The translations under genes were made by a program, and so were the position numbers. A stretch of DNA of 64,000 bases from Euprymna scolopes. Taxonomy: Eukaryota. Below the pieces are notes generated by a model that saw only the letters and a list, made by a program, of their open reading frames with translations, did no database searches and was not told the origin of the DNA. Below are positions 3,090 through 46,943 of this stretch, piece after piece. The stretch's first letter is position 1, and each line of letters starts with the position of its first letter. The DNA lies in the NCBI GenBank assembly GCA_053919585.1, contig CM132792.1, one strand, 5' to 3'.

Positions 3090-4200
3090 GCCACTATGAT
3101 AGTGATACCGACTCTTGCGAAATGATCTTTTAGAGTTTTCCACACTCAATTAAAAGGCTTTGGCAAAATGGACGAATCAAGAACGACTATGAGGTTCTTG
3201 GGTTTTGCAATCTTAATTAATATGATGGTTAAAATTTGGCCAACACTTGATTTGTTTTGTCTGAAACCATTTTGATGTTTACAGAGGATTTTGTCTGCTT
3301 CAAGATGTATACGATTCAATAAAGGCAACTTGCAGATTTTAGATGCTATTGTGATGAGTGCTATCATATGATTGTTTGGTCAAAGTCTCCCTTCTTTGGA
3401 AAAAGGAGTATTGCAACCTTCTGACCAGCACTTAATAATCTGATTGATAAACTTGATTGCAAAATGTGAAAAAGTCATTATGAAACTAATGTCAGCCAGA
3501 CTTTGGTAAGAATGTTATTAAATCTACAAGCCTTTCTGTATTTTCTAGCAGCCAGTTTGTCTATGCTCTGAAAACTCCTCGTCTCATGATTATTGTTTAT
3601 GTAGTTTTTCTCCAGTTGCGGGAGTCTTGCCAAATAAGTATTCAATTATTTTTTTTTTTTTCATTCCTAATCCTCTCGGTTTGATCAATAACCTCTAATG
3701 TGGGCTTTCACTTTTTCGACCACTGATTTCATTGAATATTTTCAGTGCACCCACTGCTTGCTTATTTACAGATGCATTTGCAATATCAATTTTGGTTTGA
3801 ATGAATATCCTTTGTTCCAGGTCATATGTTTCTCTTAGGAGCAACCTAAGCATTTCGATGGAGATATGTTTTCTCTCTTCTCTTATTGTGTTTGTGTTTA
3901 TATTCTTTTTTTATTTTTTCAACTTTGTTTCTTGATTAATTCTTCAGCTTTCCAAAGAGTTTAGTGCGAGGCTTTTTGTTTTACTTGGATTATTTTACCT
4001 GCTGCCTGTGCACAAGTTTGTTCAGAGTTTATAAGCTGAATTTTTAGATGTTTTTACTATTCACACCCTGAAAAGAATGTAAACTGTAAGAGAAATCTTG
4101 AACTTGTTATGGACATCACTGTTGCACAGCAAAGACTTGTTTTCTCTGAGACAAACTGAATGGTAACAGTGATAATGCGATGGTCTGAACTCCCTGTACT
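3090..4200 (-). mobile_element. Decayed RTE-clade LINE (endonuclease end plus RT N-half)
   Basis: ORF 3146-3367 ITIASKI..LLNRI..KILCKHQNGFRQNKSSVGQILTI; SDHRII endonuclease motif near 4170-4190; many stops and frameshifts. Confidence 0.8.
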
Positions 4201-4290
4201 GAAGGAGTTGGTATTGCTATTAAATAACCCAAGAGTGCTAATTAGTCATAAAACATTTTAGATATAATATTCTATAAAACCAGTTATCTC

Positions 4291-4580
4291 TTTCCCACAG
4301 TGGGATAATCTGACACAAGGGTCGGGAAAGTGGGATTTGAAAGATCAGCACCATAGAGGAAGAGCACACTGACCTGCAAAAGATGCCTAGGCAGCCATCC
4401 TCGGCATTCCCTGATAGGGTCTCCTCAGGCGATTATAAATAAACTAACCCATTCTTAAAGGGAAAAGGCAAAGCCTGGGAGAGTGAGCCTCTTAGAACTG
4501 TACAAAACCAGAGACTTACTTTAGTCAACAGGGGAAAAAAGCCATCTGAACAATGGTCTAGGCGCTGTAGGCTTTGATTC
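4291..4580 (+). repeat. Unclassified ~280 bp interspersed repeat, copy 1
   Basis: Shares blocks such as GGCAAAGCCTGG(G/A)AG and GAAGAGCAC with 19890-20155 (inverted) and TGACACAAG/GGCAAAGCCTGG with 42355-42565. Confidence 0.7.
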
Positions 4581-5909: not shown

Positions 5910-6236
5910 TTTATTTTTTTGGAATCCATTGAGATGAGGCTTCATAATTTGTGTATTCATTCTTTTTGTGGACTATTATCCTCATCTTTAGAGTTGTTTT
6001 CACCACGTTTCAACCAACTCATTCTCTGGCGTTTTTCAGGTGATTAACCATGATAGGATAAGAATGTTGAGTTTTGTAATTGTATCCCCAGTAATTGCCT
6101 TCCATAGTTGTTGTCTCACCATATTTCAGTGAACTAATCCTCTGGTTTGCTTGGGTAGGATTGAAACCGCTATCTTCAGACAATGCTCACCTGGAACTTG
6201 AGATTCAATGCTTCTATCCACTGTGCCATGGGTCTC
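5910..6236 (-). mobile_element. tRNA-headed short element with Penelope-type HHR tail
   Basis: Minus strand: A box TGGCACAGTGG (6228-6218), B box GGTTTCAATCC (6168-6158), body, CAC-CTGAAAA..GAAACGTGGTG (about 6043-6000), then an A-rich end near 5910. Confidence 0.7.
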
Positions 6237-6325
6237 GAAGAAGGCCAGAAGATGAGTTGACTGAAACATGGTGAAACAACTATATATATGAGGATAACAG
6301 TTTGCAAAAGAATATGCACTAATAC
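6236..6325 (+). mobile_element. Inverted partial copy of the same terminal repeat at the element's 5' end
   Basis: GAAGAAGGCCAGAAGATGAGTTGACTGAAACATGGTGAAACAAC..ATGAGGATAA is the diverged reverse complement of about 5960-6040. Confidence 0.75.
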
Positions 6326-39589: not shown

Positions 39590-41416
39590 TCACGCTCTCT
39601 CTCTACTCCACCTCCCGTCTCTATCTACCCCTCCCGTCTCTCTCTACCCCTCCCGTCTCTCTCTACCCCTCCCGTCTCTCTCTACCCCTCCCGTCTCTCT
39701 CTACCCCTCCCGTCTCTCTCTACCCCTCCCGTCTCTCTCTACCCCGCCCGTCTCTCTCTCTACCCCGCCCGTCTCTCTCTCTCCTCCTCCCGTCTCTCTC
39801 TCTCTCCTCCTCCCGTCTCTCTCTCTCTCTCCTCCTCCCGTCTCTCTCTCTCCTCCTCCCGTCTCTCTCTCTCTCCTCCTCCCGTCTCTCTCTCTCTCCT
39901 CCTCCCGTCTCTCTCTCTCCTCCTCCCGTCTCTCTCTCTCTCCTCCTCCCGTCTCTCTCTCTCTCCTCCTCCCGTCTCTCTCTCTCTCCTCCTCCCGTCT
40001 CTCTCTCTCTCTCCTCCTCCCGTCTCTCTCTCTCTCTCCTCCTCCCGTCTCTCTCTCTCTCTCCTCCTCCCGTCTCTCTCCTCCTCCCGTCTCTCTCTCT
40101 CTCTCCTCCTCCCGTCTCTCTCTCTCTCTCTCCTCCTCCCGTCTCTCTCTCTCTCCTCCTCCCGTCTCTCTCTCTCTCCTCCTCCCGTCTCTCTCTNNNN
40201 NNNNNNNNNNNNNNNNNNNNNNNNNNNNNNNNNNNNNNNNNNNNNNNNNNNNNNNNNNNNNNNNNNNNNNNNNNNNNNNNNNNNNNNNNNNNNNNNNNNN
40301 NNNNNNNNNNNNNNNNNNNNNNNNNNNNNNNNNNNNNNNNNNNNNNNNCCTCCTCCCGTCTCTCTCTCTCTCTCCTCCTCCCGTCTCTCTCTCTCTCCTC
40401 CTCCCGTCTCTCTCTCTCTCCTCCTCCCGTCTCTCTCTCTCTCCTCCTCCCGTCTCTCTCTNNNNNNNNNNNNNNNNNNNNNNNNNNNNNNNNNNNNNNN
40501 NNNNNNNNNNNNNNNNNNNNNNNNNNNNNNNNNNNNNNNNNNNNNNNNNNNNNNNNNNNNNNNNNNNNNNNNNNNNNNNNNNNNNNNNNNNNNNNNNNNN
40601 NNNNNNNNNNNNNNNNNNNNNNNNNNNNNNNNNNNNNNNNNNNNNNNNNNNNNNNNNNNNNNNNNNNNNNNNNNNNNNNNNNNNNNNNNNNNNNNNNNNN
40701 NNNNNNNNNNNNNCCTCCTCCCGTCTCTCTCTCTCTCCTCCTCCCGTCTCTCTCTCTCTCCTCCTCCCGTCTCTCTCTCTTCTCCTCCTCCTCCCGTCTC
40801 TCTCTCTTCTCCTCCCCCTCCCGTCTCTCTCTCTTCTCCTCCTCCTCCCGTCTCTCTCTCTTCTCCTCCTCCTCCCGTCTCTCTCTCTTCTCCTCCTCCT
40901 CCCGTCTCTCTCTCTTCTCCTCCTCCTCCCGTCTCTCTCTCTTCTCCTCCTCCTCCCGTCTCTCTCTCTTCTCCTCCTCCTCCCGTCTCTCTCTCTTCTC
41001 CTCCTCCTCCCGTCTCTCTCTCTTCTCCTCCTCCTCCCGTCTCTCTCTCTTCTCCTCCTCCTCCCGTCTCTCTCTCTTCTCCTCCTCCTCCCGTCTCTCT
41101 CTCTTCTCCTCCTCCTCCCGTCTCTCTCTCTTCTCCTCCTCCTCCCGTCTCTCTCTCTTCTCCTCCTCCTCCCGTCTCTCTCTCTTCTCCTCCTCCTCCC
41201 GTCTCTCTCTCTTCTCCTCCTCCTCCCGTCTCTCTCTCTCTTCTCCTCCTCCTCCCGTCTCTCTCTCTCTTCTCCTCCTCCTCCCGTCTCTCTCTCTCTT
41301 CTCCTCCTCCTCCCGTCTCTCTCTCTCTTCTCCTCCTCCTCCCGTCTCTCTCTCTCTTCTCCTCCTCCTCCCGTCTCTCTCTCTCTTCTCCTCCTCCTCC
41401 CGTCTCTCTCTCTCTN
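39590..41416. repeat. Polypyrimidine minisatellite [CCCGT(CT)n(CCT)n], 19-29 bp units, with assembly gaps
   Basis: Read directly. N runs at 40197-40348, 40462-40713 and 41417-41552. Confidence 0.95.
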
Positions 41417-42354
41417 NNNNNNNNNNNNNNNNNNNNNNNNNNNNNNNNNNNNNNNNNNNNNNNNNNNNNNNNNNNNNNNNNNNNNNNNNNNNNNNNNNNN
41501 NNNNNNNNNNNNNNNNNNNNNNNNNNNNNNNNNNNNNNNNNNNNNNNNNNNNTTGGTCCTATTCACTACATTACATGATCCACATATTCATGTCTAGATG
41601 TCGTCAAAATAGTTTGGACAGTTATTTTCATGCTGCCACATACAAATTTCAATACAATTTATTTTGTTCTGTCTATTTTTCTTGGATCAGAATCTATTGT
41701 TCTAATCCTGTATGCATGGGAAAGTTTAAAAATAATAAAAAAATATCTTCAGCATGCACAGTATGTTTAATCTGATTTTACTAAAAACTATTAAGGCAGG
41801 TATGATTTTCTTCATTGTTAGCCTTTTATAGCTTGGATTTCCTAGTCCGCTTTTTGCATGTTGCTCTACATTGTTGCACGGCATTAGGCAGACCATTGTT
41901 CATTTCCACACAGTTGGTCGTATTTACCAGTTGAGCACAAGTAATGCTAATCTGATTGCTTAGAATTAGTTTTTGTAATCATTTTCATGGATTGAACTCT
42001 GTTGAACTTCTTGTCGGATCTCTGGATTACAGGAGAATTAGTATTCTTTTACTCCAATATTAAAAACCTTTCCTCTTGTACTGAAAGCATCATACTAATT
42101 CTTTCTAAAAACTATTTCATCTGTTTTTGTTATTCATTTGAACTATTATTTTAGACTTTTTTTTTTTTTAATAAAATCGGTTATTTAATATGATTTACTA
42201 TTTAGTTTTTATTAGTATGCAGTTTGTTGTAGCCTTGTACACCAATAACCAAGACAAACCCAGAAACAAAAAGTGTATTAGTAAAAGTATGTTACAGAAA
42301 TACATATGATTCTGAAAGCCATAACTGCCACATATTGCAGTATTTATTTGCTTT

Positions 42355-42565: not shown

Positions 42566-43763
42566 GACTGCCTCAGCATGACATAAAAGACCATCGAATG
42601 ACTTTGTCTCTGAACTTATCGCATGTGTCTGCAATCTTGACCTGACACCAAATGAATTATGTAAATCTGTGCATCAATGTTGAGGTGTAACTATATTTAA
42701 AGTCCTTGGGCAAGTTTATTATTGCTGAAATAGGTAAATCAGCTTACCTCATAACAGATAAGTAGGAAAAAGATATTAGAAAAACTTCTTTTTGTCTAAT
42801 CTAAAGTTTATTATAAGTAGAATGTATGAATAAATTGATTTTCTAAGTGTGATCGATTTGTTCTCCATCAATATGATTTTTTGTACCTTGTGTATCACTG
42901 GATAATGTTATTTTGTTAATACTAGTTCAATAGTTATTTAGATTTTATATATCTTAAAGATTAATGAATATGCAAAAACAACTAAAAGTTTTTGTAATCC
43001 AAACACTAATATTCTCTGAGAAAATCTACTCGGTTTTACTAGTTAGGTGGTGCTTATCAAAAAACATCAAAATAGATTGACATATTTAAAAAGAAATGAT
43101 TTGTGAATTGTTAATGTATAATTATTCTGTGGGTATAATCTTTTATTATTTCGTTTATTTGCTGATTATTTCAAATTGTATCTAAACCAACAAATTGAAA
43201 GCATCTTTAATGTTCGTGTGTTGCTACTAACGTTTAACTCTTGTGGGTCTTCTTGGATGAGATGTCATCATCTTAAACTGGAGATTTGCTAGATCAATCA
43301 CAAAATATGAAATCATCCCCAACTTTTTGAATGAGATCCATTAAGTACACTCAACTAAATTAGAAGAAAATTGCAGTTCCAAGTTGAAAAGCATTTTTTT
43401 AATTATTGTATGTTTTGATTTTGTATTTTTGATTTTAAACATTTAAAAACTATCCAAGTGACTTTGACTGAAATTAGCAAACCTCTCTATATGACACTTA
43501 AAGAATGAAAACAAAAAGGTTTTGTGCTTAAATCAAAGTATTTTTATATGATTGATATTAGAGATCTTGTAAAAATAATGATATTATATCAATTTGCTGT
43601 TCAGTTAGTGCTACTATATACAAGTAATATAAGTTAGCAGTTCAGGATGTTTCTGGGATAGCCTATATAAATTGGAGATTTTTGGCTTGTATTATATTAT
43701 TATATGGTATTAATGTTGAATATAGCTGATTTTGAATCGCTCAACCAGCAATAATTATCATTT

Positions 43764-43806
43764 TCTGCATTGATGAGTGCGAACGCATGAAACTAGTGTC
43801 TCAAGG
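43764..43806 (+). ncRNA. Type-I hammerhead ribozyme, copy 1 (C3 mutated)
   Basis: TCTGCA-tTGATGA-GTGC-GAAC-GCAT-GAAAC-TAGT-GTC-tcaagg. Confidence 0.7.
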
Positions 43807-44106
43807 TTGGAAAATAATTATTAATATTTATAATTATAAACCTTTTTAAGATGTTTAGTCCTGTCTGGGAAACAAAACAAAACAAAAAGGCAGGAAGCTA
43901 GTAGGATGCAACATTTATGACTTCCGGTCATTATAATACTCTATCATTGCTTTACTGTTATGCCCACATTTGACATTTATAGGCGTTTAATTTCCTTTAA
44001 TTCTCTTGTTAATTAATGCTACTCCAAGAGTAACGTTCTAGTTAATCCAGTTAAAGGTGACTTTGTAACAGGGTTTGAATCTCTCGACTAGCAGTAATTA
44101 TCACTT

Positions 44107-44151
44107 CCTGAACTGATGATTGCGAAAGCATGAAACCCTAGTGTCTGTAGA
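44107..44151 (+). ncRNA. Type-I hammerhead ribozyme, copy 2
   Basis: CCTGAA-CTGATGA-tTGC-GAAA-GCAt-GAAAC-CCTAGT-GTC-TGTAGA: intact core boxes, GNRA-capped stem II, GUC triplet. Confidence 0.75.
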
Positions 44152-46943
44152 TATAAAAATAATTGATGTATATATGAATAAAATCCTTTTCTCTATGTAT
44201 GAATTACTAAAAGTCTTTAAATTTAAGTATTTAAATGTATATAATTTCAAATGCATGAAATTGCAGCAATTTCGGAAGTATTATCTTGCAATTATTAAAA
44301 TCATCTGACATTAATTTATATGAGCACCATTTTGAAATTAAAAAAATATTTGGAAATAAAACCTGCCATGTTGAAATGCAAGGTTATGATGTAATGTTAT
44401 TATAGACCCTCCCGTCTCTTATTTTATGTATATCTTTTCTCTCTCATCACTTATCAGTTGTCCTTTATTTACATCATTAGCCCCCCCTCCCCACCACAAA
44501 ATTTAAAACACGGACAGATGAAAAGAGAGCTCACTGACAACATTATCAGCTTGTTAATAGTATAGAGATTATGCCTTTTTGGTCAGTTTATTCCTTTTCT
44601 TAACTTGATTAGGTAATCTGTTTGAAAAATCCATCTAATTGTGATTTCATTATTGAAATCTTGCTTGCCAATCAATTTCCACTGAACTGGTGTGAGGAGA
44701 AAACTGATCTTATCTGTTTACTGTGTGAAATGCTTAGTTCCTTATATTTTGGAAATTTATTTCGGTCTGTTTTATCTGCACACCCTGCCTTCCTTTCATA
44801 TGCATGTATAATAAGTAGGTGATTCTCCCCCCCCCCCGACGTACCTTGTTCTTCTTTTCCTAATGTAAGTCATTAAATATGAAATACTCTATAATGTTGT
44901 TAATTTCAGAAAGCAGGTAGATACACGTTTTACAGGTGTGTAATCCATATAATAGACATTGATTCGATTTATGCTTATTTTATTTATCAGATTTTATATT
45001 TGTGTTACTGCCACTTTCTCTTGCTCTCTCTCTCTCTTTCTGACATGCTGAATCTTGTTTATCATTGGCCACAATGTGTTTGATTTTGCTTTGCTTGCTT
45101 GAGCTTCCATGTTTGAACACGTCTAGACAGTTGCTAGGAGACTTGTTAAATGCCAGCCTATTCTTTTTTACCCTCTACTCACACGACATTCCACATTGCT
45201 TTAACAGTTGACCTCCCTCTTTTGTTAAATAAACAAATAGATACATTGAAATATTAAGTTGTTGAAACAAAATATACATAAAAATAATGAAAATAGAAAA
45301 AGAACAATCTAACTTTTTATGTTAAAAAAAATTAAGGTTTTCTTTAAAATTTTAAAAGGTGAAAGAATTTAGATTTATTAGCAAAAATAAAAATATTCAA
45401 AGTATAAATTTGTTTTGCTAAGTTTTATTAACTCCAATCGTTTTTCGGTATAGAATTTTCTTTAAAATCAAAATTCTCTTGATTTGTTTTGTGCAATCAT
45501 AAAATGCAATTTTTATTTATCTTTAAACAAAAAACATTCTGACATTTTTAAGAATAAATTATTACTTGTGACAGTTTTTGTTAAACAGAAGCAAAATGTC
45601 CGTTATCACAATTCCTGATATTGACATGAATATATGGAATTTCAAATTATTTTAGCGAAAGAATTGATTTGTGCAAGTTGTGATTTGTAATTGGTTTTAT
45701 GTTACTCTTTGGGGCAAAGTAAATTTATTGCTTACTGCCTGAGGTACTTCAACCAGAGAATGCCGACAGAGCTGCCAAAGCAATTTTTAAAAGGCCTGAA
45801 TCTGTCTCCTTTAGCTGTGCTTACTTAACTCTTCCAATCTTGTTTCACATCTTTCTGCAGTGGAAAGGAAATAAATATTACAATTTGTGTCAGTTATGTT
45901 CCCCAAAATCATGACGTGTACTTCTGTAAATACTTTTGCTAATACATATTTTTTGTCAATTATACCACTGTGTTGTCTTGATTAGTTTTAGTTTCTTTTT
46001 AGAATGAAATATAGAATTCAAGAAATCAGTTTTTAGTCACTTTTACAGTTTTTGACCTTTTAGCTTAATGATTCGCAGAACATTTTTTTCTTGTCTTAAA
46101 CCAGTTTGTATAGGATTAAAACTGAGCACATTATCATATTGCCGTACACACTATACCTGTGAATGGATGGTTTTAATGCTGGGAAGAAGGACAACTAACA
46201 AAGTTTTAATGGTAAGAGAAGGGTGGAAAAAAAATTGAATGGCCTAAATAATTAAGAGAAAAGAGGGGATGTTTTTTTTTTTTATGATATCACAATATAG
46301 TCTGAAATCCATTGTATTTGTGCATGAATTGTTTGTGAGAGCAAAAGTGGATGATGATAATGATGAGAAATTGATGAAAATAAGGAAGGAAAAAAGAAGA
46401 ACCAAAACAAACATTATAGACTCTGTATGTTTGTGATGACACGAAATTGATTGAAGTATGGAAAACTTGATAGTTGCCAAATGATGTGAATTTCAAAGAG
46501 AATTTGTGTTCATTCCTAGGATGAAGGTTTTTGTTGTGTTTTGAAGCAGATACTCTTTCTTTTCAAAGAGTTCCGTTTACATTAGGATTTGCTTTTAATC
46601 TGGCTATTCACGAATGATAAACACAGATCTTGGGTAGTTTTGATTTATTTATAATAACCTGTGTTTCAACACCGCCAGTTTTATGTTACATTAAGTAGAG
46701 TGAAATGGAAAGAGAATATTAAGGTATTTGTAAACTAAGATAAATGTACAAATACTATGAATAAAGCGGTTTTCAATTAATAATAGTTTCCTGTCATTGT
46801 AAAAACATGATTATCAACTAATGCTAAAAATAAGAAATAATCTATTTTTTTAATATATGTAATATTGGCTGCGATAGTAATATATAACTTTATTTTTTGT
46901 AAAAATAGCTTTTTTCCCCTTATATTTGAATTCTATTATTATT

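What the first reader, a model, noticed from the sequence alone, without database searches (positions are those of the whole stretch)
43731..44151. Tandem hammerhead ribozymes 345 nt apart: candidate retrozyme / small circular RNA unit
Seen: two ~70 bp direct repeats, each ending in a type-I HHR, with GTC cleavage triplets ending at 43800 and 44145. The copies' defects are complementary. Together they suggest the ancestor TCTGCA-CTGATGA-GTGC-GAAA-GCA(C/T)-GAAAC-ACTAGT-GTC-TG(C/T)AGA, with a 6 bp stem I and a palindromic ACACTAGTGT stem III/loop of the kind that lets minimal HHRs cleave as dimers. Known: metazoan non-LTR retrozymes are tandem HHR repeats of a few hundred nt that yield circular RNAs and are thought to use PLE proteins. 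Inference: this is a decayed member of such a family, distinct from the long-stem-II HHRs elsewhere in the window. It is the best candidate for an undescribed system here.
Basis: partly seen in the sequence, partly recalled or inferred. Interest (0 to 1): 0.8.

Follow-up and report, generated by a model that had tools for sequence, protein, structure and literature searches.

The report
Dead hammerhead-ribozyme retroelement copy
This is an old, mutated copy of a short non-coding jumping element that carries a self-cutting hammerhead RNA motif; thousands of relatives sit in this 5.9-Gb mollusc genome, the kind of element is already known, and this copy is no longer functional.

Summary
Two ~90-100-nt direct repeats lie 345 nt apart, and each ends in a type-I hammerhead (HHR) motif with GTC ending at 43800 and 44145.

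The whole feature (43722-44164) is one insertion of a dispersed 345-nt-unit repeat family:
- The first look found at least 3,600-4,500 candidate copies.
- 786 HHR sites match the family motif with 3 or fewer mismatches, against 0 in the reversed control.

The family shows the insertion marks published for Penelope-like elements (PLEs). It has continuous 5' truncation and partial tandems of 1.1-2 units. A 19-41-nt tail follows the last HHR, and copies tend to land in (TA)n microsatellites. Intact RT + GIY-YIG PLE genes exist in the genome.

The family HHR has an intact core, a 6-bp helix I and a palindromic helix III whose predicted dimer is a double hammerhead. It also has a U-U mismatch at the base of helix II, as published for the axolotl HHR_Amex2. 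A sister lineage carries a compensatory G-C to C-G change in helix II.

The window copy is about 16% diverged and both of its ribozymes are damaged. Rfam does not recognise the motif, and circular RNA was not shown.

The scan has already found this kind of element, including a 345-bp-unit family, on other DNA of this genome. It is a new member of a known kind (animal retrozyme, Sm-alpha-like).

The parts
43722..44164 (+). Whole insertion: 1.27 units of the 345-nt family plus the 3' tail. GC is 33% and it is non-coding.
   Evidence: nhmmer with a profile of 23 natural units gives profile 267-347 followed by 4-347 (L001 coordinates converted). GC and the longest stop-free stretch of 39 aa come. 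It is 83.9% identical to the family profile.
43722..43800 (+). 5'-truncated partial unit (the pseudo-LTR-like repeat). It holds the 3' part of the B-box/tRNA-like segment plus HHR copy 1, and lacks the A-box-like part.
43764..43806 (+). HHR copy 1, dead. C3 is changed to U, the helix II loop reads GAAC, helix III has a 2-nt deletion, and the 3' strand of helix I reads TCAAGG instead of TGTAGG.
   Evidence: Sequence. Family CM R1 scores it 38.3 bits, E 5e-6. Compared with natural intact copies.
43801..44145 (+). One complete 345-nt unit, running from one cleavage site to the next.
   Evidence: Copies elsewhere in the genome are 72-84% identical to it.
43801..43838 (+). UA-rich start of the unit. 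This is the stretch that forms the 3' 'tail' of insertions, and is where I infer cDNA priming on (TA)n.
   Evidence: Tail mapping in 58 elements.
44018..44095 (+). Weakly tRNA-like segment. It has a decayed B-box-like GGTTTGAATCT at 44072-44082 (family majority GGTTCGAATCC) and a decayed A-box-like TAGTTAATCC near 44039 (family majority TAGCAAATGG).
   Evidence: Column majorities. ARAGORN at a relaxed threshold hits this relative position in about 15 loci, but there is no hit at default settings or in Rfam.
44107..44151 (+). HHR copy 2. The core CUGAUGA / GAAA / GUC is intact. Helix I has one A-G mismatch (44111 A, family C), helix III reads ACCCUAGUGU (palindrome broken), and the last helix I pair is lost.
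   Evidence: Sequence. R1 scores it 69.4 bits, E 9e-13. RNA-library contigs from other copies read C at 44111.
44146..44164 (+). 3' tail: the first ~19 nt of the next unit. It is followed by degenerate TA-rich flank (GATGTATATATGAATAA).
   Evidence: The L001 tail maps to unit positions 19-27.

Best explanation
Window 43722-44164 is one old, dead insertion of a non-autonomous, non-coding retroposon with a 345-nt unit. Each unit carries a weak Pol-III-type (B-box / tRNA-like) segment followed by a minimal type-I hammerhead ribozyme.

Likely life cycle (inferred):
1. A source copy longer than one unit is transcribed.
2. The two hammerheads pair through their palindromic helix III (ACACUAGUGU) into a double hammerhead. 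They cut after GUC and release a unit-length RNA, which a host tRNA ligase can close into a circle.
3. A reverse transcriptase/endonuclease of a Penelope-like element nicks a (TA)n microsatellite. It primes cDNA synthesis on the UA-rich stretch 19-40 nt downstream of the ribozyme site of a continuous template, either a circle or an uncleaved multimer.
4. Synthesis stops after a variable distance. This gives 5'-truncated copies or copies longer than one unit, whose repeated ends look like tandem ribozymes.

Shown here: the family, its anatomy, its target preference, its age, the ribozyme motif and its sister-lineage compensation, and intact PLE genes in the genome.

Inferred: self-cleavage, circularisation, the use of PLE enzymes, and priming by microhomology.

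The window copy began inside the tRNA-like segment, so HHR 1 has no promoter of its own upstream. It has since diverged about 16% from the family profile, which has damaged both ribozymes.
For: 1. Family size. The 434-nt feature has at least 4,520 first-look candidates on many chromosomes, and the 43 scored were 72-84% identical. A better-preserved copy gives 3,635 candidates.

2. Anatomy across 58 elements:
- 5' starts are spread over the whole unit. Lengths run from 42 nt to 2 units, with no break at one unit.
- About 29% of HHR-selected elements exceed one unit.
- The 3' end lies 19-41 nt after GTC.

3. Target. (TA)>=5 lies just downstream in 23 of 58 elements and upstream in 10 of 58, against 4.2% of background windows (p=5e-17 and 1.5e-4).

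4. These are the published PLE hallmarks: 5' truncation, partial tandems forming pseudo-LTRs, a 30-40-bp tail, (TA)n targets (reported there for the Naiad clade) and HHRs in pseudo-LTRs (PMC8557442; PMC4209133). A preprint derives animal retrozymes from PLE pseudo-LTRs (10.64898/2026.07.22.740005).

5. PLE enzymes are present. GIY-YIG has 15,397 first-look candidates, many in open frames of 804-808 aa. One fetched copy encodes RVT_1 + GIY-YIG in 808 aa.

6. The ribozyme:
- The pattern CTGATGA-N8-20-GAAACACTAGTGTC has 6,169 matches against 0 in the control.
- Helix II is UUGC-N4-GCAU in this lineage (2,143 matches to the degenerate pattern, most of those listed G-C) and UUCC-N5-GGAU in a sister lineage (5,513 matches). 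Of 200 listed sites, 198 have a complementary 10.3/11.3 pair. This is a G-C to C-G compensation.
- Helix I varies G-U / A-U / G-C at one pair.
- The predicted minimum-energy homodimer of a natural copy is exactly the double hammerhead, at -30.4 kcal/mol. The monomer HHR fold (-6.8) is not the monomer optimum (-9.8).
- A U-U mismatch at the base of helix II is published for the axolotl HHR_Amex2, which self-cleaves weakly as a monomer and well as a dimer (PMC7229834).

7. Age. Copies are 72-91% identical to the family profile and the window copy is 83.9%. The best pairwise identity is 85%. The HHR columns are no better conserved than the body (0.91 against 0.88). Pair counts equal the shuffles (89.5% against 89.1%). 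This is neutral decay.
Against: - Rfam recognises neither a hammerhead nor a tRNA. This holds in the window, in 20 loci with intact motifs, and in a 241-nt stretch at E<=10.
- The family lacks the G10.1-C11.1 pair that is highly conserved in canonical and PLE hammerheads (PMC4209133).
- No cleavage or circle was observed. RNA-library contigs are assemblies that cannot show ends or circles, and exact-locus contigs cross both GTC sites uncut.
- No autonomous PLE sharing the HHR + tail module was found.
- The dimer energy is only about 1.4 sd below shuffled homodimers.
- Only 40 of several thousand candidates were scored per search, so a young subfamily could have been missed.
Confidence: 0.75

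Rival explanations
1. It is a tRNA-derived SINE mobilised by a LINE rather than a PLE. The (TA)n next to it would be a 3' tail made by the LINE reverse transcriptase, and the hammerhead would be a passenger or a 3'-processing signal.
For: - A B-box-like GGTTCGAATCC and an A-box-like motif lie upstream of the HHR.
- Copies show 5' truncation with a fixed 3' end.
- LINE fragments occur near some copies, for example an Exo_endo_phos_2 ORF in L056.
Against: - (TA)n is also enriched on the 5' side (10 of 58 against 4.2%). This fits a target, not a tail.
- More-than-unit partial tandems, the variable 19-41-nt tail and an occasional inverted 5' partial copy (L010) are PLE marks, not LINE marks (PMC8557442).
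- No tRNA is recognised at default thresholds.
Confidence: 0.12
2. It is the remnant of the terminal repeats of a coding Penelope-like element whose ORF was deleted at this locus.
For: PLE pseudo-LTRs carry HHRs and form partial tandems (PMC4209133).
Against: - The same 345-nt non-coding unit separates the repeats in dozens of independent loci.
- The longest stop-free stretch here is 39 aa.
- No RT or EN ORF adjoins any of about 60 family loci, apart from an unrelated LINE fragment.
Confidence: 0.03
3. It is a local DNA-level duplication or a piece of satellite DNA with a chance hammerhead-like motif.
For: Only 1.27 units are present, Tandem Repeats Finder reports nothing here, and Rfam is negative.
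Against: - Thousands of dispersed copies have the same architecture and target.
- The motif control gives 0 matches.
- Helix II shows compensation between lineages.
Confidence: 0.03
4. This locus is itself an active retrozyme source that makes a ~345-nt circular RNA today.
For: HHR copy 2 keeps the full catalytic core, and RNA libraries contain contigs over the HHR module.
Against: - Copy 1 has C3 changed to U and no helix I.
- The two copies no longer form a double hammerhead in silico.
- The contigs piled on 44048-44179 are 90-95% matches from other copies, reading C at 44111.
- The few exact-match contigs run uncut across 43800/43801 and 44145/44146 at low depth.
Confidence: 0.02

Closest known systems
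Metazoan non-LTR retrozymes (Cervera & de la Pena 2020, PMC7229834), especially the axolotl Rtz_353 / HHR_Amex2
   Same: - Low-GC, non-coding repeats of ~350 nt with a type-I HHR.
- A short helix III capped by a palindromic tetraloop.
- A U-U mismatch at the base of helix II.
- The ribozyme is expected to act as a dimer.
- PLEs are present in the same genome.
   Different: - The copies here are mostly single 5'-truncated or 1.1-2-unit insertions in (TA)n, not long arrays.
- Helix III has 3 bp.
- There are no recognisable loop1-loop2 tertiary contacts, because helix I is a plain 6-bp stem.
- Circular RNA and cleavage are not shown.
- The host is a mollusc, probably a cephalopod. I found no published description for that group.
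Schistosoma Sm-alpha SINE-like elements with hammerheads (Ferbeyre 1998, as cited in PMC4209133). That Sm-alpha combines a Pol III promoter with an HHR is from my own knowledge.
   Same: A short non-coding retroposon that pairs Pol-III-type box motifs with a type-I HHR, present in thousands of dispersed copies.
   Different: - The HHR here has U-U instead of G10.1-C11.1, and a GNRA-capped helix II of 3 paired bp.
- The tRNA ancestry is only weakly supported.
- The (TA)n target and the tail point to PLE-type integration.
Minimal hammerheads of Penelope-like element pseudo-LTRs (Cervera & de la Pena 2014, PMC4209133)
   Same: - A palindromic helix III region.
- Dimeric action is expected.
- The HHR sits in the repeated end of a partial-tandem insertion.
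- Copies show 5' truncation and a tail.
   Different: - PLE min-HHRs have a long helix II (6-8 bp), a bulged base after A9, a conserved G10.1-C11.1 and a short helix I.
- This family has a short helix II, a symmetric U/U at its base and a 6-bp helix I.
- It has no ORF.
Newt / salamander satellite 2 hammerhead repeats (Epstein & Gall 1987, as cited in PMC7229834)
   Same: A ~330-nt unit whose HHR has a weak, palindromic helix III and cleaves as a double hammerhead.
   Different: Those form long tandem arrays with full tertiary-contact loops. These are dispersed insertions targeted to microsatellites.

Membership tests
Hammerhead ribozyme, type I | Conserved core CUGANGA ... GAAA ... and a cleavage triplet UH (GUC) | tested here: met
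   The family motif and window copy 2 have all core bases. Window copy 1 has C3 changed to U. There are 6,169 genomic matches to core + helix III against 0 in the control.
Hammerhead ribozyme, type I | Three helices around the core, supported by compensatory changes | tested here: met
   Family: helix I has 6 bp, helix II 3 bp + GNRA, helix III 3 bp + CUAG. G-C to C-G compensation occurs between lineages at 10.3/11.3, with 198 of 200 listed sites complementary. Helix I shows G-U / A-U / G-C variants. Within the family there is no covariation beyond the shuffles. The window copies have broken helices I and III.
Hammerhead ribozyme, type I | G10.1-C11.1 pair at the base of helix II | tested here: not met
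   The base is U-U in both lineages. The same exception is published for the active axolotl HHR_Amex2 (PMC7229834).
Hammerhead ribozyme, type I | Recognised by the Rfam hammerhead covariance models | tested here: not met
   No hit at gathering score in the window, at E<=10 around the finding, at E<=1 in 20 loci with intact motifs, or at E<=10 in L031:1480-1720.
Hammerhead ribozyme, type I | Site-specific self-cleavage | not testable with these tools
   Only in-silico folding was possible. The dimer optimum is the double hammerhead. RNA contigs cannot show ends.
Animal non-LTR retrozyme | Non-coding, low-GC repeat of 150-450 bp carrying a type-I HHR, in tandem (dimers to multimers) | tested here: met
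   The unit is 345 nt, GC is 33%, and there is no ORF over 39 aa. Copies span 0.1-2 units and about 29% exceed one unit. No long arrays were seen for this lineage.
Animal non-LTR retrozyme | Expressed as linear and circular RNA of unit length | tested here: inconclusive
   HHR-module sequences from other copies are present in RNA-library contigs of three studies. Contigs cannot show circles, and DNA carry-over is not excluded.
PLE-mobilised non-autonomous element | Frequent 5' truncation, partial tandems (pseudo-LTR) and a 30-40-bp tail | tested here: met
   with the criteria taken from PMC8557442. The tail is 19-41 nt, in two clusters.
PLE-mobilised non-autonomous element | Microsatellite, (TA)n, target preference | tested here: met
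   23 of 58 elements downstream and 10 of 58 upstream, against 4.2% background.
PLE-mobilised non-autonomous element | 3'-end similarity to an autonomous PLE of the same genome | tested here: inconclusive
   Intact PLEs exist. The single one fetched (L073) shares nothing with the unit.
tRNA-derived SINE (Sm-alpha type) | tRNA-like head with A and B boxes | tested here: inconclusive
   The family majority has GGTTCGAATCC (B-box-like) and TAGCAAATGG (A-box-like) about 35 nt apart. ARAGORN and Rfam find no tRNA at normal thresholds. At a relaxed threshold ARAGORN hits the same relative position in about 15 loci, but not the majority sequence.

The most novel reading that the evidence does not exclude
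The 3' junctions always lie 19-41 nt past the ribozyme cleavage site, inside UA-rich stretches that merge into (TA)n. Copy lengths also run smoothly through one unit. Together these could be a genomic footprint of reverse transcription on a covalently continuous, ribozyme-processed and religated circular RNA, primed by microhomology at TA microsatellites. That would be direct evidence for rolling-circle retrotransposition of retrozymes by Penelope-type enzymes, in a lineage (cephalopod-like mollusc) where retrozymes are undescribed. It would also involve a U-U helix II hammerhead variant shared with the axolotl.
Probability: 0.3. Interest if true: 0.55.

Novelty: new member of a known kind. 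Interest (0 to 1): 0.3.

Why it matters
For this locus, little: it is a dead repeat copy.

At family level it adds a large mollusc (probably cephalopod) genome to the hosts of hammerhead retrozymes, with several thousand copies. It shows that the U-U helix II variant is not peculiar to salamanders. It also gives clean insertion junctions (tail, (TA)n target, more-than-unit copies) that bear on how Penelope-like enzymes copy ribozyme-bearing RNAs.

For annotation, such elements should be masked as repeats. They also explain many hammerhead-like motifs that Rfam misses.

Tried and rejected
- **Rfam.** Run at gathering and at permissive thresholds on the window, on 20 family loci and on a 241-nt stretch. 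It gave no hammerhead or tRNA hit, only microsatellite-driven miRNA-like noise.
- **ARAGORN.** Default settings found nothing. Relaxed settings were noisy.
- **Single-strand folds.** Folds of the motif are no better than shuffles.
- **Structural descriptor scan of the window.** It found only the two reported motifs plus two chance-like hits.
- **Other copies in the window.** BLAST of the unit against the window found none. The HHR element noted at 5910-6325 is unrelated in sequence.
- **Young copies.** A search with a better-preserved copy gave a best identity of 85%.
- **Read laying.** Only assembled contigs were available, so ends, strand and circles cannot be seen. The 'go back' joints with extra letters are what partial tandems of other copies would give, and are not evidence of circles.
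- **Autonomous partner.** The GIY-YIG search worked, but the loci could not be cut out. One PLE was fetched.
- **Fuzzy regular-expression scan.** It timed out.
- **Earlier findings by sequence.** The look-up was blank.
- **Within-family covariation.** None beyond the shuffles, as expected for dead copies.
Full report
**1. Observation.**
The sequence shows two hammerhead-like motifs on the + strand.
- Copy 1 (43764-43806) reads TCTGCA-TTGATGA-GTGC-GAAC-GCAT-GAAAC-TAGT-GTC-TCAAGG.
- Copy 2 (44107-44151) reads CCTGAA-CTGATGA-TTGC-GAAA-GCAT-GAAAC-CCTAGT-GTC-TGTAGA.

The GTC triplets end at 43800 and 44145, exactly as reported. The repeat finder gives the direct repeats 43731-43793 / 44074-44136 (84%) and 43793-43819 / 44138-44164 (78%). 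A global alignment of the two ~100-nt repeats gives 77% identity with one 2-nt indel.

It finds nothing at gathering score in the whole window and no hammerhead at E<=10 in 43000-45000.

**2. What it belongs to.**
The window lies in a 5.9-Gb genome of 925 contigs with about 30% GC.
- The 434-nt feature has at least 4,520 first-look candidates. The 43 that were scored lie on many chromosomes at 72-84% identity, and most cover the whole shape of partial unit, full unit and short extension.
- Natural copies with an undamaged motif read CCTGCA CTGATGA TTGC GAAA GCAT GAAAC ACTAGT GTC TGTAGG.
- This 45-mer occurs 4 times exactly and 786 times with 3 or fewer mismatches, against 0 for the reversed control.

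Helix I has 6 bp and helix III is the palindrome ACACTAGTGT. The one error is the base of helix II, which is U-U in the family rather than G-C/U.

A covariance model built from 32 natural copies finds exactly two sites in the window: 44103-44153 (69.4 bits) and 43760-43808 (38.3 bits).

**3. Anatomy of the family.**
I built a profile from 23 natural units and mapped it onto about 60 independent loci.
- Among loci chosen only for an intact HHR, element lengths run continuously from 42 nt to more than one unit.
- About 29% exceed one unit, the longest seen has two full units, and there is no break at unit length.
- The 3' end is not at the cleavage site. It lies 19-41 nt beyond it, in two clusters (about 19-22 and 32-41 nt). 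Both clusters fall inside UA-rich stretches of the unit's start that merge into the flanking microsatellite.
- (TA)>=5 lies just downstream of 23 of 58 elements and upstream of 10 of 58, against 4.2% of background windows (p=5e-17 and 1.5e-4). Other flanks are (CA)n, (GA)n or (TTA)n.
- An inverted partial copy abuts the 5' end in L010.

High 5' truncation, partial tandems that make pseudo-LTRs and a 30-40-bp tail are features published for Penelope-like elements. A (TA)n target preference is reported for the Naiad clade, and HHRs in the repeated ends for canonical PLEs (PMC8557442; PMC4209133). A 2026 preprint concludes that animal retrozymes derive from PLE pseudo-LTRs.

The genome holds many PLEs. 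GIY-YIG has 15,397 first-look candidates, many inside open frames of 804-808 aa. The one I fetched encodes RVT_1 plus a C-terminal GIY-YIG in 808 aa, with 98.6-99.5% identical inverted and tandem partial copies around it. It shares no sequence with this family. The specific autonomous partner is therefore unknown.

**4. The ribozyme.**
- The family motif has the full catalytic core and a GUC site.
- Helix II is U-U, U-A, G-C, C-G with a GAAA, GUAA or AUAA loop.
- A more abundant sister lineage has U-U, U-A, C-G, C-G with a CGAAA loop. It is homologous along the unit (L019:601-921 and L005:2802-3098).
- Degenerate patterns that allow any combination at 10.3/11.3 return 2,143 sites (4-nt loop) and 5,513 sites (5-nt loop), against 0 in controls. 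Of the 200 listed, 198 are complementary. This is a compensatory G-C to C-G change between lineages, with U-U kept in both.
- Helix I shows G-U, A-U and G-C at one position.
- Within the family, genomic copies show no covariation beyond the shuffles (89.5% against 89.1% paired). The HHR columns are no better conserved than the body (0.91 against 0.88 outside CpG). That is what dead retroposon copies should show.
- The monomeric HHR fold (-6.8 kcal/mol) is not the monomer optimum (-9.8). The predicted optimum of two copies (-30.4) is exactly the double hammerhead, with a 10-bp intermolecular helix III. The energy is only about 1.4 sd below shuffled homodimers.
- The missing G10.1-C11.1 pair is a departure from canonical and PLE hammerheads. 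However, a U-U mismatch at the base of helix II is published for the axolotl HHR_Amex2 on a 350-bp retrozyme. That ribozyme cleaves 22% in one hour as a monomer and much better as a dimer (PMC7229834).
- Rfam does not recognise intact family motifs either.

**5. Promoter-like segment.**
Upstream of the HHR the family majority has GGTTCGAATCC (B-box-like) and, about 35 nt before it, TAGCAAATGG (A-box-like). ARAGORN and Rfam find no tRNA at normal thresholds. At a relaxed threshold ARAGORN repeatedly hits that relative position (about 15 loci). A tRNA origin is possible but not shown.

**6. Age and state of the window copy.**
- Copies are 72-91% identical to the profile, and the window copy is 83.9%.
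- The best pairwise identity found with a well-preserved query is 85%, so no young copy was seen among those scored.
- The two repeats of the window element, presumably identical at insertion, now differ at 23% of columns.
- The element starts at profile position 267. HHR 1 therefore has no promoter-like segment of its own, and only read-through transcription could place both ribozymes on one RNA (inference).

**7. RNA.**
Three RNA runs and one probable RNA run, from three studies, hold parts of the stretch. When they are laid on it, contigs pile on 44048-44179 at 90-95% identity and read C at 44111, the family state. They therefore come from other copies. Some are parts of long poly-A contigs.

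The few exact-match contigs cross 43800/43801 (X2 record 1) and 44145/44146 (X7 record 31, X6 record 24) uncut, at low depth. Contigs cannot show ends or circles, and DNA carry-over is not excluded. Expression as circular RNA is therefore untested, and nothing suggests that this locus self-cleaves.

**8. Verdict.**
The feature is a real but dead 1.27-unit copy of an old, abundant, non-coding hammerhead retroposon with PLE-type insertion marks. It is a new member of a known kind (animal non-LTR retrozyme, Sm-alpha-like).

Earlier notes of this scan describe the same kind of element on other DNA of this genome. They include families with 345-bp and 322-bp units inserted in (TA)n. I saw sister-lineage HHR pairs 311-334 nt apart, which fits the latter.

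I found no paper describing hammerhead retrozymes in cephalopods. That the host is a cephalopod is itself an inference. It rests on genome size, numbered contigs reaching at least C45 among the hits, and RNA runs labelled 'mollusc metagenome'.

Noticed in passing
window 39595-41413: A CT-rich minisatellite with periods of 19-67 nt, mainly 23-27, and up to 98% matches. It explains the extreme GC/AT skew at 38-42 kb and the 621-aa ORF (39701-41566, minus strand), which has no Pfam match.
   Followed up: partly
window 5910-6325: Another element noted by the scan as 'tRNA-headed HHR, capped by an inverted copy of its own tail'. It shares no detectable sequence with the 345-nt unit and did not pass my HHR descriptor.
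   Followed up: partly
L073 (G000:C2:14893300-14898300), minus strand: A very young Penelope-like element. [quoted passage not shown] The repeated part holds a hammerhead-like string, TTGAAGA-A-GCCCG-TTTAAAT-CGGGC-GAAA, with U instead of C at core position 3.
   Followed up: partly
G000 genome-wide, e.g. C1:26091477/26091799 and C1:34907719/34908030: The sister HHR lineage (helix II TTCC-CGAAA-GGAT) is more abundant than the window's lineage: 5,513 against 2,143 pattern matches. It occurs as pairs 311-334 nt apart. It is probably the 322-bp-unit family noted elsewhere by the scan.
   Followed up: partly
L013, L021, L024 (5' junctions); also L040: The 5' ends of three or four elements fall at the same place, 'ATGAAAC', 12-17 nt upstream of the cleavage site at the 3' base of helix II. 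Starts at profile positions 188-193 recur six times. These may be reverse-transcriptase stall points, or chance.
   Followed up: no
L027 / L031 (G000:C13:116.53 Mb): This family copy contains an internal inverted duplication of the B-box region. It forms a long perfect hairpin that Rfam scores as several miRNA-precursor-like hits below their gathering thresholds.
   Followed up: no
window 43650-44250 (run X4, organism B): A DNA run of a different, coded organism holds about a quarter of this locus's 31-mers. This suggests the insertion, or part of it, is shared with a related species.
   Followed up: no
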